DNA of 64,000 nt from the NCBI RefSeq assembly GCF_033153115.1, contig NW_026889803.1, positions 15,004,001-15,068,000 of the forward strand. The letters are read 5' to 3'. Every line of letters begins with the position of its first letter. Position 1 is the first letter of the stretch. Below the pieces are notes generated by a model. It had not been told where the DNA came from. It did not search any database and saw only the letters and a list, made by a program, of their open reading frames with translations. This stretch comes from Saccostrea echinata. Its lineage: Eukaryota. A program made the translations under genes and the position numbers. Below, one piece after another: positions 36,620-42,509 of this stretch.

Positions 36620-36700
36620 ATACTCCTTTCTTAATGAGATTTCATGAATATGCATATCGAACTCAAAACGAGGCTAAGGTCGTATCGAGTATAAACAAAA

Positions 36701-38910
36701 ATGGAGGAGAAAAAAGCGTCTGCAACGCGAGACTTGACAAAAGTACCATATATTACCTTTGGATTTGTCGAGAGCTTTATAAAGAAAGGAAGTCAGAGTC
36801 TCGGAGAAAAGGAAATATCTAAAGGATATAAATATTTCTCCGAGAGATATGTAACAAACATCACAAGTACGTATTAAAATCTCCGTTTAAACTTTCACTT
36901 TGCTTATGGATCATACGATGGTCAAGTGTTATAATCTATACACACAATGAATGGAAAGAAACAGTCGCATAATTTAAATCATATAATGAAATATAATTTT
37001 CATAAGCAAATAAGTCAACAAAATTATACACTTTCCAAAATAATTCAGTTCACAGTGCAGTAAATGGATGTGTAGTGAAAGGAAAATGTCACAGATCACA
37101 GCGCAGGAATGAATCACCTCATGATATTGAGGTAAGAAAAAAAATCAGTTTGGATCTGTAAGATTTCTAATTACGTGTTTTAATTAGCATGTTTACATAA
37201 TCAAATTTTACTGGTATCAGGATTTGTAAAGTGTCAGATTTATAAATATGTTTTGTATCTAGTGATCTACACTTTTTCTATGCCTCAGTTACCAGTTTTT
37301 CTTTAACAAGCTGTGGTACAATTTGTAGATCTTTCTGCTGGATGGTCCGAGTGTGGACAGTAGTACCTGTTCCTGTACAATTGGACAGTCAGGGCACTGT
37401 GGGCATGTCACTGGGTTGCTATTTTGTCTTGCGCACATGAAATCTGCTAACATGACATTCATACCATCTGATGTTTTGAAGACTTCTCTACCTCAGACCT
37501 GGCATCTGCCCCGAGGAGAGAAGATATCTGGAAGCTCCGCTGACAACGTGGTCGTACATGGTTATGATGCTAAATCACCTCAACAACAACCTCGTGGATT
37601 GCGATCAACTTTGTACAATCCAATCAATTCTGATGTCCCACCAATCTCAGAACTTTATTCAAGAGTTTCGGCAGTTGACAAGACTTCTTTATTGCTTACT
37701 GTTGTGAATTTGGGTAACATAGTGGATTGCAACTATACAGACACAAAATTTGGTAAATTTCCAAAAGGATCTCCCCTGGCTGTGCAACAAAAACTGTCAT
37801 CCCATTATGTATTGAATATTTTAGATGCTGGTGAATTCCCACTCCTTCCTGTTGAAAATGTTATGCAACAACAACTGCATATGATTCTTGATGAAAAGAA
37901 AAGTGGCAGTTTGTCCTCTATATATGTGACAGAAGAGGAGTGCCATCAAATTGAAGAAATGACAAGGTTGCAAGGAGAGAGTCCGAAGTGGCATGCGATT
38001 CGCAAGGAGAGGATAACAGCATCAGTTTCTGGTGAAATTGTAAAACGTAGAGCAGGTAAGGTGTTATAGATCATGCAGACATTACCTCATTAAAAAATAT
38101 TTTCAATATTCAATATATATTAACATCGATTAAAATTTACATAAACCTTAAAGCCTGACTCATTTTATATGATATTATGCATTTATTTTATTTATGTAAA
38201 TTTTAATTTGTATGCTGAAATTATTTTATATACTCTTTTCATAGATTTTGGACCTTTAATAAAAAGATTGAAAACAACAAGAAAAGTTGTCACAGAGAGT
38301 ATGCGCCGTGGATTATCATTCGAGGCGGTAGCTGCTGAAGCCTTTGTACAAGTAAGCAATGTTAATCTATTCTATCAAACTTGTAGCATAATATACAATC
38401 ACTAGTATGCATGTTCACAGGATTCCCAACATTTTTACACAGTAATCTATGCATGACTTATGTCAGATTCATGTATTTTGTTTATATCATATTTTAAAAT
38501 CTTATTAAATTTTTCATAAATTGCAGCTGCAAGACAACAATGTCAACATATACCCTTGTGGAATCATTGTCAGTCCTTATGCTTCCTGGCTTGCTGCTAG
38601 TCCTGATAGGAAGGTATACAACCCAACCATGAACCCCCCATATGGTTTACTGGAGATAAAGTGCCCTGTAAAACCTTTGACAGAGTGTGTTTATCTGAAG
38701 AAGGATGGGGATGTATGGAGATTGAAGAAAAACCACAACTACTTCTACCAAGTTATGATGCAACTTGCTGTGACAGGTCTTACCTGGTGTTACTTTTTTG
38801 TGTGGCACTGTGATGAAAGCCATTTGGAGGTGATTAACTTTGATAATGAAGAGTGGCAGGAAATGAAAAACAAGATTGATTCCTTCTATTTTAACTACTT
38901 CCTTGAATAA
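36701..38910 (+). CDS. SWIM zinc finger plus YqaJ/lambda-exonuclease-like protein (488 aa). Exons 36701-36866, 37049-37131, 37329-38055, 38245-38351, 38527-38910
   Basis: Phase-consistent GT-AG splicing with no stops. SWIM CSC..G..GHCGH. YqaJ motifs W...R..RITAS, G..FE, LAASPD, LEIKCP, YFYQVMMQL. Confidence 0.88.
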
Positions 38911-38959
38911 AACCTTGGTCTTTGACACTTCTTTTAGAATACTGAATTTTTATCATGTA

Positions 38960-39148
38960 CAGTAAAACAAACTTATAGCGAACACATCTTTTAATGAAAT
39001 ACTGACTAATGAATTCTCCCTGACTGCAAATTGATTTCTTAATCCTTATGGTTTTAAAACATGCTTCATACTGACAAATCTTACAAATTAGGTTTAAACA
39101 AAGCAAGCTTGCTTGCCCCTGGCACTTTGTTATAAGCATGTTTTACGG
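38960..39148. mobile_element. TA-flanked MITE nested between the two ISL2EU genes
   Basis: TIR cagtaaaacaaacttatagc / gttataagcatgttttacgg, with TA on both sides. Confidence 0.7.
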
Positions 39149-39439
39149 TACAGCTATCTTAAAAACAGAGTACCACATATATAGCTTACTGAATAAAAGC
39201 TGCATAGAGGATATGTATATATAAAAACATCACTTATCACAAAAGGTAAAAAATTATCTTGAGAAAAATAACTAATACAGTCATGTTCAGCCAATATCAG
39301 TTTAATCAACAATAAAAACAGTCATTGTAAGAATTTAATTACTAGTTAACATCACAAAATGAAATATCATGGCAACTTACACCCTGAACTCAAAATTGAG
39401 TAAATGTATGTCATGTGTATTCACATTGACTATGTTTTT

Positions 39440-41975
39440 TTATTTACACCAATCTTTCACAAGAGGACCTCTGAACAGAGTCAGCATATTGGCAACAGTC
39501 CAAATCTGATTTATTGTACCAGTCATACTCAATGGGATGACACCATCAAAGAGATGGTATTCTTTGACCCTCCGGATATGTCGTTCAATATGTATTCTAA
39601 GCTTTGCAATAATTTGTGTTTGCTCTACTTCCTGCTTTGAAAACTGACCTTGGCTGAGAAGAAAGGGTGGGGCATTGACAGAAATACCTGTACCTTCTAA
39701 TACTTTGTTCAGCACAAACCCTTTATCGGCCATAATTGAATCACCTTCTTCCAGAAGATCAAGGAGACCAGATAATTTTGTAATTTCAACATCTGACATA
39801 CACCCTGTGTATAATGAGGACACAAAAGTGAGAGCTCCATGAGGAGCAATTCCAACAAGCCCTTTCCATGTGTGGGAACTTTTGTATGTTGAATAACATT
39901 TTGATCCAAGTGCTAGGGACGATGGACGCTCAGTTTTAATCTCTGTGCAGTCAATTATGACTCTAGTTGAGGGGTAAAACAATTTGAAGGACTGGGGCAT
40001 TTTTTCATAAGTTTGTTCCTTACTAGGCCAAATATTCATGCTGCCTAAAATGAAATACAGAAAGTTTGCCCATGTTATGATCTTTCGACTAACTGTAGAA
40101 ACATGACAATTGAATCTGACTCCTAAATCTTGTGCCATTAGACCACATTTCAGCCTGCATAGGAACATGAACAACTCGTCAATTAACAACATGCTTCTTT
40201 GTTTGCCTACATTTACCAGCTGGTTAGGTTTATCACATGATTTATAATAATAGCTTTTCATACAGGTTGCAGTAGGTTTGACATATTCAAAAAAAGCTAA
40301 AAACATAGCCATTGTTGCAAATCCTGTGTAAAATTGAATCATTGAATCGTCATTTGAAAACCGCTGAATTCCAAATCGTTCAACCTCAATCCTCTGCTGT
40401 AGAGCCTTTATTTCTTCATCCTTCTTCTGCAACAAACTTTCTAATTCTTGAATTCTCTCGATCTTTTTCTGCATTTCATCAGGAGGAGGAGAACTAAAAT
40501 CATGATTTTTTTTTTTTTAAAAATGAGACTCTGCAAAAATTATATTACATGAAAATAAAAGTCATACCTTAAAGACATAATGACCAGCATTCTACTGTCC
40601 AGCAGCAGTTGAAAGGTAAATCATTCAAAAAAAGTTGATTACAATTGCAAACTGAATATTATCAAGTCATCAGTTTGACAAAAGAATAACTTTTTCGAGA
40701 ATGATCCATGTTAAATATGACTTTGTAAAACATGTCCTGAAAAATTCAAACTTTAGATTGCAAGTCAATAAATATTCCATCAGTATGCATACATGTATTT
40801 TAAATAAAGTAGGCACCTTAATGACCTTATGCCTTATGTACTTTTTACTTCATCATTATTTTAAAAATCTATGTTTCTTTTAATATTCGACAGATACCAT
40901 GCATCACATGTCTTTTTTTTAAGCTTGTCTTGAACAATTCAACTAAAATTACCCATCCTCAATTAACATTGATGGAGTAGAATCCATTCCCTCATGTCTC
41001 ACAATATGATCCTCAAAATCCTGCTTCGGTATTTTCTCTGGAAGGATGTGTTTCACAATTGGGCGTCTAGTGTTGGAATCTGCCTTCCAGGAGAAAACCG
41101 AGGGGACAGATCCAGGTTTCAATGTTGTCCTCACTGGTGTCCATTTGATATCTTCCCTTTTAAAATGGCGAGAGCAGACAACTGTTTGATCACTTATCTG
41201 AATAATATTAAATGAATTTTACTCAATATTATTTACATGACATATATACTAGAAGCAGTTAACATTTTGGAGCATTTCTACATAACTTTATTAGCCTAAA
41301 CAAAACAAACTTGCATGGAAGATGCATCTAGGGATATCAGTTGATTAATGATACTTCATAACAAATACATGTAGCCTATGTGAATTTTTTTTTCAAGTTG
41401 AGAAACTATGGGGTATTAAACTTCACATGTAAAACACTGTCATTGATTGTTTTAATATTTAACTGTTTAACTACAGTAATAACGATTTTTTTTTTACTGG
41501 ACTTAACGCTTTTTATGATTACAGAAAGTTACGGTAATATTTAGCTTTTACCACCTCTATTAAACAGCTGATTGACTTCCTGGTTAACATACTCCACTAG
41601 GACCTACATGCCTCTGCATCATGATCAGATGACATTTCGATTTATAAATATGTCATTCCAAATGTATTCTAATAAATGTATGAAAATTATGATTAATCAA
41701 CTAATGGTAATATATTTTTGTTTAAATAAGCGCTGATCACTGATTAGTTTGCATCAATATTGTTTACGTGTTCTTGAAACATGTATTCGAAGGTCACTCA
41801 CAGTAAAAAGGGGGCCAGGGTCTCTTTTGATCGCTTGGATCCATGCCTTCCTCATTTCGGGCGCCTTTGGTATCCGGTGAAATGATAACTCTGGATGGAT
41901 TCGCCCATTTCCGTTACAAAATGGTACACAACAGTGTTTGTCGTGACCCTTCCCTTCCTCCTCTGACGCCGACAT
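39440..41975 (-). CDS. THAP, coiled-coil, HTH and DDE_Tnp_4 transposase (490 aa). Exons 41975-41802, 41197-40953, 40493-39440
   Basis: THAP CCVPFC...W...VCSRHF...LKPGSVPS. Catalytic motifs IIDCTE, MADKGF, RIHIER. Phase-consistent junctions, no stops. Confidence 0.9.
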
Positions 41976-42509
41976 TTTGTTTACATTTTACCGACCTTAG
42001 CCTCGTTTTCGATTTTTCAGCGCGACTTATGAATATTCTTTGAAAATGGAGTATTGCGGTGCAACGCAGACAAAGAAGAGTTGCTTGTACTGCAGACACG
42101 TTGACAAGTTTCCATTCAAACTCTGACTCGAGATATTTGTGACCAGGGCAGAACACTCAATTGCTCATATGTTTCAAGGTCGAGTTTCAAAGATATAAGT
42201 GCGTGTCCAAAACATAACATTTCTGTTAAAAGTGCATAGAAGCTTGCAGGTTGCACATGAAGAATGGGACGCTTCGGAAAGATCAATTAGACATTGTCAA
42301 GGGACTACACAGAAATCTTTCCTATAAATTTCATGTTTGATATCAGTAATGTTTTATTTTAGTCAATGTCAATAAAAGTGCGTTGAACTATGTACAATCA
42401 GTTGACTTGATTTTAAGAATTTAAAGAATAATCCTTAAAATTGGACCGATAGGTCTACGTTGCTAGTGTCCGTGCACCAGTTAAGGGGTAGTGGCATGTG
42501 TATAGAATT

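What the first reader, a model, noticed from the sequence alone, without database searches (positions are those of the whole stretch)
36622..42052. Intact two-gene ISL2EU transposon whose ends appear to serve as twin promoters
Seen: the 18-mer AAAACGAGGCTAAGGTCG lies at 36665-36682 and, inverted, at 41992-42009, exactly 43 bp inside each terminus. Each copy is followed by TAAACAAA(A)ATG. The ATGs of the exonuclease (36701) and the transposase (41975) sit only 79 and 77 bp from the ends. The outer TIR matches at only 17/24 positions while this inner motif is perfect. Known: ISL2EU elements encode a THAP-DDE transposase plus a YqaJ nuclease and make AT duplications. Inferred: one inverted module acts as transposase-binding site, core promoter and 5' UTR for both genes. 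That would couple expression of the two genes and allow self-repression when THAP binds the ends.
Basis: partly seen in the sequence, partly recalled or inferred. Interest (0 to 1): 0.75.

Follow-up and report, generated by a model that had tools for sequence, protein, structure and literature searches.

The report
Conserved end motif in ISL2EU transposons
This is an intact, young jumping gene of a known type (ISL2EU), and the short sequence just inside each of its ends is kept unchanged in every related family examined, so it is a real control or docking site whose exact job is still unproven.

Summary
The 18-mer lies at 36665-36682 (+) and 41992-42009 (-), 43 bp inside termini that a second 99% copy confirms to the base. 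AT flanks both sides. The two ATGs lie 79 and 77 bp from the ends.

The motif is not a quirk of this copy. Its 13-nt core AAAACGAGGCTAA sits at both ends of at least four ISL2EU families in this genome. It also sits in two elements from other public assemblies whose transposase pieces are only 54-63% identical in protein to this one. In 12 of 12 coding ends it points at a THAP-transposase or nuclease start codon 25-58 nt away. Surrounding columns are about 50% identical.

Distance from tip to motif is tight: 43-45 on the nuclease side, and 32, 43 or 53 on the THAP side. These steps are about one helical turn. That favours a docking site used in transposition, most likely for the THAP finger. 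Such a site necessarily lies in each gene's promoter or 5' UTR.

Promoter activity, THAP binding and self-repression remain untested. The RNA data show the nuclease gene spliced but give no 5' ends. Twin promoters in transposon ends are already known from MuDR. The scan had already noted other ISL2EU copies in this genome, but the short summaries I saw do not mention this motif.

The parts
36620..36621 (.). AT flank, left copy of the presumed 2-bp target-site duplication
   Evidence: identity with the C12 copy ends here. AT precedes the tip in 9 of 10 ends whose flank was seen.
36622..42052 (.). Complete ISL2EU element, 5431 bp, with two convergent genes
   Evidence: second copy aligns to exactly these bounds plus AT; domains; 54 substitutions and 8 indel events against the C12 copy.
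36622..36634 (+). Left (nuclease-side) tip ACTCCTTTCTTAA
   Evidence: the tip block ACTCCnTTCTTAA / AGACnnTTCTTAA is shared by the families.
36644..36655 (+). Near-palindrome ATGAATATGCAT (family consensus ATGAATATTCAT)
   Evidence: an ATATTCAT block is present in most ends of the 12 aligned; in four ends (f1_nuc, f5_thap, m128_thap, f3_thap) MAFFT places a variant there or places the block elsewhere.
36665..36682 (+). Subterminal motif, left copy; the invariant core is 36665-36677
36701..36866 (+). Nuclease gene exon 1 (predicted, GT donor at 36867)
   Evidence: the ORF from this ATG is conserved in fam2, fam3, fam5, fam7 and L128 (RDL..P.I.F.FVE..SKG). The boundary was read by hand.
37049..37131 (+). 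Nuclease gene exon 2 (predicted)
   Evidence: Hand reading (AG/GT sites and frame continuity). No read support.
37329..38055 (+). Nuclease gene exon 3 (SWIM-like Cys/His cluster, start of the nuclease domain)
   Evidence: The 3' boundary comes from a spliced contig joint in X1, X2 and X4. ORF. Weak Viral_alk_exo match. The 5' boundary is predicted.
38245..38351 (+). Nuclease gene exon 4
   Evidence: Both boundaries come from GT..AG joints (38053>38243 with cut +2; 38351>38527).
38527..38910 (+). Nuclease gene exon 5 with the YqaJ domain and the stop codon
   Evidence: joint; PF09588, E 4e-8.
39440..40493 (-). Transposase exon 3: HTH_Tnp_4 plus DDE_Tnp_4, including the stop codon (acceptor predicted)
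   Evidence: The frame closes with exons 1-2 (174 + 245 + 1054 nt = 491 codons, hand count).
40953..41197 (-). Transposase exon 2: second half of the THAP finger (CSRHF ... GSVPSVF) (predicted)
   Evidence: Hand translation. ORF 40949-41134.
41802..41975 (-). Transposase exon 1: first half of the THAP finger
   Evidence: PF05485, E 1.1e-8; 47 genomic matches, the closest being the other family copies.
41992..42009 (-). Subterminal motif, right copy
42029..42038 (-). GAATATTCAT block of the right end
42040..42052 (-). Right (transposase-side) tip ACTCCATTTTCAA
42053..42054 (.). AT flank, right copy of the presumed target-site duplication

Best explanation
The element is an intact, recently transposed ISL2EU transposon. 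Each end carries a three-part module. First comes a 13-nt tip. Next comes an AT-rich near-palindrome (ATGAATATTCAT type). Last comes an invariant core AAAACGAGGCTAA, which points inward. I read the core as the sequence-specific docking site for an element-encoded protein during transposition. The most likely protein is the N-terminal THAP zinc finger of the transposase, by analogy with the subterminal THAP sites of P and Galileo. Each gene starts 25-58 nt downstream of the core and under 100 nt from the tip. The site therefore lies inside whatever promoter or 5' UTR these genes use. The ends probably also drive or gate transcription of both genes, as the MuDR repeats do, and occupancy by transposase could feed back on both genes at once. 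Shown: the termini, the conservation, the orientation, the spacing, and the transcription and splicing of the nuclease gene. Inferred: which protein binds, promoter activity, and autoregulation.
For: 1. Genome-wide, all 14 exact and all 3 one-mismatch matches to the 18-mer lie at ends of fam1 or fam2 copies.
2. The 13-mer core has 72 exact hits against 34 for the reversed control. I saw the context of 42 hits, and 22 of them are ISL2EU-type ends. Eleven more are assigned by coordinates.
3. In fam1, fam2, fam3 and fam5 the core occurs at both ends in inverted orientation. One copy is followed by a THAP ORF and the other by nuclease exon 1.
4. In the 12-end alignment, 12 of 13 core columns are invariant, against a mean column identity of 50%.
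5. The same holds in L128 and L127, which are absent from this genome (best DNA identity 71% and 65%). Their DDE pieces are 63% and 54% identical in protein to this element.
6. A remote THAP locus (51% identity) still keeps ATAACGAGGCTGA.
7. Tip-to-motif distances are 43, 44, 44, 43, 44 and 45 on the nuclease side. On the THAP side they are 43, 43, 53, 53 and 32, plus 50 in one copy with a truncated tip. Motif-to-ATG distances range from 25 to 58 without pattern.
8. Dead fragments (L009, L103) have lost the motif.
9. Precedents seen in passages: P-element THAP sites lie 9 and 21 bp inside the repeats (PMC7776569). The Galileo THAP site is about 70 bp from the end (PMC3688188). The MuDR repeats contain the promoters of mudrA and mudrB (PMC10401008).
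10. The nuclease gene is transcribed and spliced.
Against: There is no binding, footprint or transcription-start data of any kind.

The motif does not match the one THAP core I could check. THAP1 has TxxxGGCA (PMC2879526) and this motif has AxxxGGCT. That paper also says different THAP fingers bind different sequences.

Sharing one docking site across families whose tips differ (ACTCC versus AGAC versus TCTC) would allow cross-mobilisation, which families usually evolve away from. A host factor would explain universal conservation more simply.

The helical-phase argument rests on about three independent length changes and was noticed after the fact.

I found no amplified non-autonomous family in this genome that would show a cis requirement for transposition.

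In ten metagenome contigs ('group A') the whole cassette lies inverted next to a tip, which I cannot explain.

One RNA-like contig crosses the right tip unspliced. At least some molecules there do not start inside the element, or are DNA.
Confidence: 0.5

Rival explanations
1. The core is bound only by a host transcription factor and is a promoter element. The transposase recognises the tip and/or the AT-rich palindrome instead.
For: In 12 of 12 coding ends the motif points toward an ATG 25-58 nt away. In several ends it is followed by TGTAAACA or TATAAACA, which from memory is a forkhead-type core.
Against: Outside ISL2EU ends the 13-mer is no more frequent than its reversed control: about 39 residual hits against 34, with 19 hits not inspected. 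No sign of host promoters using it was therefore seen. Spacing is constrained to the tip, not to the ATG. The TAAACA block is absent from fam2 and fam3. The cassette occurs inverted in the group A repeats.
Confidence: 0.25
2. The core is the docking site of the second protein (the SWIM/YqaJ nuclease) or of the HTH domain of the transposase, not of THAP.
For: Han et al. 2015 call the second ORF product a DNA-binding protein of unknown role (PMC4482050). [quoted passage not shown] The conservation and spacing data fit any element-encoded binder equally well.
Against: No DNA-binding domain was detected in the nuclease exons by Pfam at E<=0.01. THAP is the only domain here with documented subterminal site recognition in other transposons.
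Confidence: 0.12
3. The motif acts in the RNA, as a shared 5' UTR element controlling translation or stability of both mRNAs.
For: It has the same sense in both transcripts if they start upstream of it. In the 12 aligned coding ends, upstream ATGs after the motif occur in only two ends, and both open 1- or 3-codon ORFs.
Against: No conserved pairing partner was evident by eye, and I ran no fold. The constraint on distance to the DNA tip has no RNA rationale. The transcription start is unknown.
Confidence: 0.05
4. The motif has no function. Its identity reflects recent common descent or conversion between ends.
For: Within fam1 the two copies differ by only about 1%, so identity within that family alone proves nothing.
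Against: The core is invariant across families and genomes whose neighbouring columns are about 50% identical and whose proteins are 54-65% identical. It decays in dead fragments.
Confidence: 0.02

Closest known systems
ISL2EU group of the PHIS (PIF/Harbinger-ISL2EU-Spy) superfamily (Han et al. 2015, PMC4482050; passages read)
   Same: AT flanks. A THAP-HTH-DDE transposase plus a second ORF with a YqaJ exonuclease domain. Size close to the reported mean of about 4.8 kb. An animal host.
   Different: The tips begin AC/AG/TC rather than the 'usually GG' reported. The conserved subterminal 13-mer and AT-rich palindrome are not mentioned in the ISL2EU passages I saw. The word 'promoter' has 0 occurrences in the main text of PMC4482050, PMC4122938 and PMC9179366. 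Their supplements were not visible.
MuDR of maize: the repeats contain the promoters of mudrA and mudrB (PMC10401008, passage)
   Same: A two-gene DNA transposon in which each gene starts just inside one repeat. The repeats therefore serve both transposition and expression.
   Different: A different superfamily (Mutator) and a plant host. From memory the repeats are about 220 bp and nearly identical. Promoter activity there is shown experimentally, whereas here it is only inferred.
P element and Galileo: subterminal THAP-binding sites (PMC7776569; PMC3688188)
   Same: The transposase has an N-terminal THAP finger. A short specific site lies inside the outer repeat rather than at the tip. Spacing at the two ends may differ (9 and 21 bp in P; 43 versus 32, 43 or 53 here).
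   Different: The catalytic domain is unrelated (P-type RNase H with a GTP-binding insertion versus IS5-like DDE_Tnp_4). P and Galileo are single-gene elements. Binding is demonstrated there and not here. That the P 5' site overlaps the promoter is recalled from memory and was not seen in a call.
[quoted passage not shown]
   Same: A sister group with the same DDE fold. It is a two-gene element with cis sites beyond the catalytic tip.
   Different: The accessory protein there is a DNA binder. Here it is a nuclease, and the DNA-binding finger sits on the transposase itself.

Membership tests
ISL2EU (PHIS superfamily) | 5'-AT-3' target-site duplication | tested here: met
   AT lies on both sides of both fam1 copies, and identity stops there. 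AT precedes the tip in 9 of 10 ends whose flank was seen. No empty site was examined, so a duplication as opposed to insertion between A and T is inferred.
ISL2EU (PHIS superfamily) | Transposase with THAP, HTH and DDE domains | tested here: met
   exon by exon: PF05485 at E 1.1e-8, PF13613 at E 2e-11, PF13359 at E 9e-36.
ISL2EU (PHIS superfamily) | Second ORF with a YqaJ exonuclease domain | tested here: met
   PF09588 at E 4e-8 on exon 5. Splicing of exons 3-5 is seen.
ISL2EU (PHIS superfamily) | Repeats usually begin with GG (a usual feature, not a defining one) | tested here: not met
   The tips read ACTCC. Other families here read AGAC or TCTC.
ISL2EU (PHIS superfamily) | DDE domain falls in the ISL2EU clade of a PHIS tree | not tested
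   No reference ISL2EU, Harbinger or Spy sequences were fetched.
Repeat-embedded twin promoters (MuDR type) | Two convergent genes, each starting just inside one end | tested here: met
   The ATGs are 79 and 77 bp from the tips. The range is 71-94 bp in 12 ends.
Repeat-embedded twin promoters (MuDR type) | Transcription starts mapped inside the repeats | not testable with these tools
   Only contig-level runs were available. There were 0 of 4 runs with coverage on 36500-37263, and no start table.
Repeat-embedded twin promoters (MuDR type) | The isolated end drives a reporter | not testable with these tools
   This is a bench experiment.
Subterminal THAP-binding site (P/Galileo type) | A conserved short site inside both ends of an element whose transposase has THAP | tested here: met
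Subterminal THAP-binding site (P/Galileo type) | Match to a known THAP core (THAP1 TxxxGGCA) | tested here: not met
   The motif reads ACGAGGCT, sharing only GGC (hand comparison with the passage). That paper states that THAP fingers differ in specificity, so this does not exclude binding.
Subterminal THAP-binding site (P/Galileo type) | Direct binding by the THAP domain | not testable with these tools
   Needs EMSA or footprinting.

The most novel reading that the evidence does not exclude
AAAACGAGGCTAA is the ancestral, still shared recognition word of the THAP finger of a whole ISL2EU clade spread over several animal genomes. It is held in helical register with the cleavage site. At the same time it is the core of a compact promoter under 80 bp long at each end. 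One protein-DNA contact would then license both cutting and the coupled, self-limiting expression of transposase and nuclease. If so, the roughly 80-bp ends plus the two genes define a minimal, portable two-component transposon system from a group with no biochemical work that I could find.
Probability: 0.25. Interest if true: 0.6.

Novelty: new member of a known kind. Interest (0 to 1): 0.42.

Why it matters
In the papers I could search, ISL2EU is known only from sequence surveys. The three papers I opened never use the word 'promoter' in their main text. Two of them, PMC4122938 and PMC9179366, also never use 'subterminal'; I did not search for that word in the third, PMC4482050.

This window holds an apparently intact, roughly 1%-diverged copy. 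The comparison made here delimits its functional end to about 80 bp, with one invariant 13-mer. That gives a concrete oligonucleotide for a THAP binding test, a concrete fragment for a reporter test, and a spacing prediction: 10-bp shifts tolerated, 5-bp shifts not.

If the ends work as read, the element would be a candidate for a new two-component gene-transfer tool. The related Spy group already supplies one (PMC11304231, abstract seen in the listing). If the ends do not work as read, this is an ordinary young transposon with well-conserved ends.

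Tried and rejected
Core-promoter spacing. GGTCG(T) at the 3' end of the 18-mer fits, from memory, a downstream promoter element. The TCAT in the palindrome fits an initiator. By hand count, however, the distance between them is +25 rather than +28 in fam1 and fam2 nuclease ends, it varies from 10 to 29 nt in other ends, and GGTCG is not kept in fam3 or fam5. Rejected.

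Splice-donor reading of TCG|GTAAG. It is present only on the THAP side of fam1 and fam2. Rejected.

Nuclear-receptor half-site reading of AAGGTCG. That half of the 18-mer is the variable half in fam3, fam4 and fam5. Not supported.

Non-autonomous derivatives. These would show a cis requirement for transposition. Searches with the 81-nt and 79-nt ends gave 11 and 9 matches, all of them full copies or a few dead fragments. The fam3-like solo end L092 is unique inside. No such family exists here.

Wider relatives. The viral-contig scan found no relative: 15 pattern matches and 0 confirmed.

RNA 5' ends. The single read-laying run returned contigs only and no start table.

Contrast set of remote ISL2EU families. 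One search listed about a dozen remote THAP loci.

Fam4 (L071, L073, L076). It has the core followed by an ATG, but I could not show a THAP frame. Left unclassified.

Metagenome contigs. Groups A and C are unresolved. Twelve of the 30 contigs look like chance matches.

Spliced gene models were searched exon by exon only. I did not search with joined exons.

Full report
WHAT IS THERE

Window 36622-42052 is a 5431-bp element with two convergent genes.

On the minus strand, exon by exon, Pfam finds:
- THAP on 41975-41754 (E 1.1e-8);
- HTH_Tnp_4 (E 2e-11) and DDE_Tnp_4 (E 9e-36) on 40474-39440.

On the plus strand Pfam finds:
- YqaJ on 38521-38910 (E 4e-8);
- a weak Viral_alk_exo match on 37353-38069.

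Reading GT-AG sites by hand gives these models:
- Transposase: 41975-41802, 41197-40953 and 40493-39440, totalling 491 codons including the stop.
- Nuclease: 36701-36866, 37049-37131, 37329-38055, 38245-38351 and 38527-38910, totalling 489 codons including the stop.

Both models close in frame. I searched the exons separately and left out the joined step.

TERMINI

A search of the whole genome with the element plus 100 bp of flank found one more full copy, at C12:4674712-4680145. It is 99% identical and aligns to query 99-5533, which is window 36620-42054. The flanks of the two copies are unrelated beyond an AT on each side.

The two copies differ at 77 alignment columns, made up of 54 substitutions and 8 indel events. 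Only one difference falls in the terminal 77-79 bp. It is at 36686, between the motif and the ATG.

The C12 copy has an extra base after 37492, in nuclease exon 3. The window copy aligns without a break to the L128 homologue over 235 residues. The window copy therefore looks like the intact one.

THE MOTIF IS REAL AND OLD

Within the window the 18-mer has exactly two matches at up to 3 mismatches, and 0 of 100 shuffles reach two.

Genome-wide at up to 2 mismatches there are 30 hits, against 26 for the reversed control. The composition of those hits is what matters:
- All 14 exact and all 3 one-mismatch hits lie at the ends of fam1 (2 copies) or of a sister family, fam2. Fam2 is about 70% identical in DNA and has copies on C3 (two), C32, C61, C59, C5, C18 and C28.
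- Ten of the 13 two-mismatch hits are recurrent variants at the ends of further families.
- The other 3 two-mismatch hits look like chance.

The 13-nt core AAAACGAGGCTAA has 72 exact hits against 34 for the control. I saw the context of 42 hits, and 22 of them are ISL2EU-type ends. Eleven more are assigned by their coordinates.

In fam1, fam2, fam3 and fam5 the core occurs at both ends, inverted. The first long ORF after one copy is a THAP finger (CCVPxCNGN). The first long ORF after the other is nuclease exon 1. A seventh family (L104/L105) has AAAACGAGGCTAG in front of a nuclease exon 1.

A scan of public metagenome contigs for ATATTCAT, a 5-30-nt gap and the core returned 30 contigs.
- Three contigs (L127, L128, L130) encode THAP/DDE, and two of these also YqaJ, by tblastn.
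- L128 is a complete 5.5-kb element with the core (one copy with a single mismatch) in front of both genes.
- Neither L128 nor L127 is present in this genome. The best DNA identities are 71% and 65%, and only in coding parts.
- Their DDE pieces are 63% and 54% identical in protein to this element.

In an alignment of 12 ends from tip to ATG, 12 of the 13 core columns are invariant and the thirteenth is 90% or more. Mean column identity is 50%.

One remote THAP locus (51% identity) still reads ATAACGAGGCTGA. Decayed fragments (L009 and L103) have lost the motif.

Chance, recent descent and conversion are therefore excluded. The core is under selection.

WHAT THE ANATOMY SAYS ABOUT FUNCTION

Orientation is constant. 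In 12 of 12 coding ends the motif points at the start codon.

The distance to that codon is loose. The values are 36, 34, 40, 39, 36, 28, 44, 36, 27, 25, 36 and 58 nt.

The distance from the tip is tight.
- Nuclease side: 43, 44, 44, 43, 44 and 45 nt in six families.
- THAP side: 43, 43, 53, 53 and 32 nt.
- One further THAP-side value is 50 nt, in a copy whose tip is shortened. I cannot tell whether it is the same copy.

The steps of 10-11 nt equal one turn of the helix. A protein on the core would stay on the same face as the cleavage site. The remote locus L136 would give about 65 nt if its AGACGTTCT is the tip, but I could not see its flank.

This is what one expects of a docking site in a transposition complex. 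It has no obvious meaning for a promoter element. The argument rests on about three independent length changes, and I noticed it after the fact, so I call it suggestive.

Between tip and core, most ends carry an AT-rich near-palindrome of the ATGAATATTCAT type. The THAP-side ends of fam3, fam5 and L128 carry an extra palindrome, TGACC(N2-3)GGTCA. That palindrome is the 10-nt insertion.

PROMOTER QUESTION

The genes begin 71-94 nt from the tips. Either the ends contain the promoters or transcription enters from outside.

The one reads call gave contigs only. It showed the following:
- GT..AG joints at 38053>38243 in 3 of 4 runs.
- GT..AG joints at 38351>38527 in 2 of 4 runs. Together these joints prove that the nuclease gene is transcribed and spliced.
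- No contig on 36500-37263 in any of the 4 runs.
- Unspliced contigs in transposase intron 1.
- One contig covering 41720-42054 that continues 5 letters beyond the tip into sequence unlike this window.

Most variants in these contigs match the C12 copy. That last contig could be read-through, antisense, pre-mRNA or contaminating DNA. It argues against an exclusively internal start but does not settle the matter.

On the nuclease side of fam1, fam2, fam3 and fam5, out-of-frame ATGs sit between the tip and the core. Among the 12 aligned coding ends, ATGs after the core appear in only two, and they open 1- and 3-codon ORFs (hand reading). This fits a start near the core. By my rough estimate the difference is not significant.

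COMPARISON WITH WHAT IS KNOWN

Han et al. 2015 (passages) define ISL2EU by three features: AT duplications, a THAP-HTH-DDE transposase, and a YqaJ second ORF. All three are met here. The tips do not start with the usual GG.

That paper, the Spy paper and the teleost survey contain no occurrence of 'promoter' in their main text. A search for ISL2EU together with promoter and binding site found 3 papers, none about this by title or abstract. Supplements were closed, and end alignments there might show the motif.

The idea of ends that double as promoters is established for MuDR. Subterminal THAP sites are established for P and Galileo. The THAP1 core TxxxGGCA is not matched.

Earlier notes of this scan list eight other ISL2EU findings in this genome, and two follow-up notes among them call the genome an oyster. 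I did not test that. The short summaries I saw do not mention the motif.

VERDICT

There is one inverted, selected module in front of both genes. Its first job is most likely transposase docking rather than promotion. The promoter and feedback ideas remain reasonable and testable, but they are not new in kind.

Noticed in passing
window 37492 region versus G000:C12 copy (L002): The 99% sister copy has one extra base after 37492 in nuclease exon 3 and a 6-bp deletion at 37958-37963. In this assembly only the window copy keeps the nuclease frame open. The RNA-like contigs mostly carry C12-type variants, and one shows a 1-base loss at 37520.
   Followed up: partly
window 39117-39152 and the 41275-41465 bin: Very high contig depth in all four runs (up to 6783 in X3) on a 36-bp stretch of the intergenic spacer and on part of transposase intron 1. 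These look like short repeats shared with abundant transcripts.
   Followed up: no
L070, L079, L128:1-84: The THAP-side ends of fam3, fam5 and L128 carry an extra palindrome, TGACC(N2-3)GGTCA. It accounts for the 10-nt longer distance from tip to motif.
   Followed up: partly
L107, L109, L112, L114, L117, L120, L122, L125, L134, L135: Ten metagenome contigs hold a non-coding repeat. In it the cassette of palindrome, 13-mer and TGTAAACA lies inverted beside a nuclease-type tip. A second module 190-280 bp further in points the other way. The structure is not understood.
   Followed up: partly
L124:2528-4201, L111, L132: A roughly 1.7-kb non-coding unit whose 110-bp inverted repeat (73% identity) begins exactly at the 13-mer. 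It may be a non-autonomous relative, or something else that shares the word.
   Followed up: partly
L063, L084, L085, L097 (G000 C1, C8, C8, C54): An unrelated repeat family also contains the 13-mer, in the context GATACTACGAG-AAAACGAGGCTAA-CAC.
   Followed up: no
window 37784-38055, run X3: A run labelled as a different organism (B) holds a contig with 0 differences over 272 nt of nuclease exon 3. The family is therefore shared by two organism labels.
   Followed up: no
L009 (G000:C1:19479539-19479872) and L103 (C25:27358756-27358802): These are solo end fragments of fam1 type, 88% and 96% identical. In both the motif is deleted or broken.
   Followed up: yes
L121:640-880: A roughly 255-bp deletion derivative in a metagenome contig keeps both tips and both modules, with the start of the THAP ORF fused to the other end.
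   Followed up: partly
L128 (contig OCZB010008670.1), whole length: The contig is exactly one element. It begins and ends with TAT plus the tip, as if assembly stopped at the repeat boundary.
   Followed up: no
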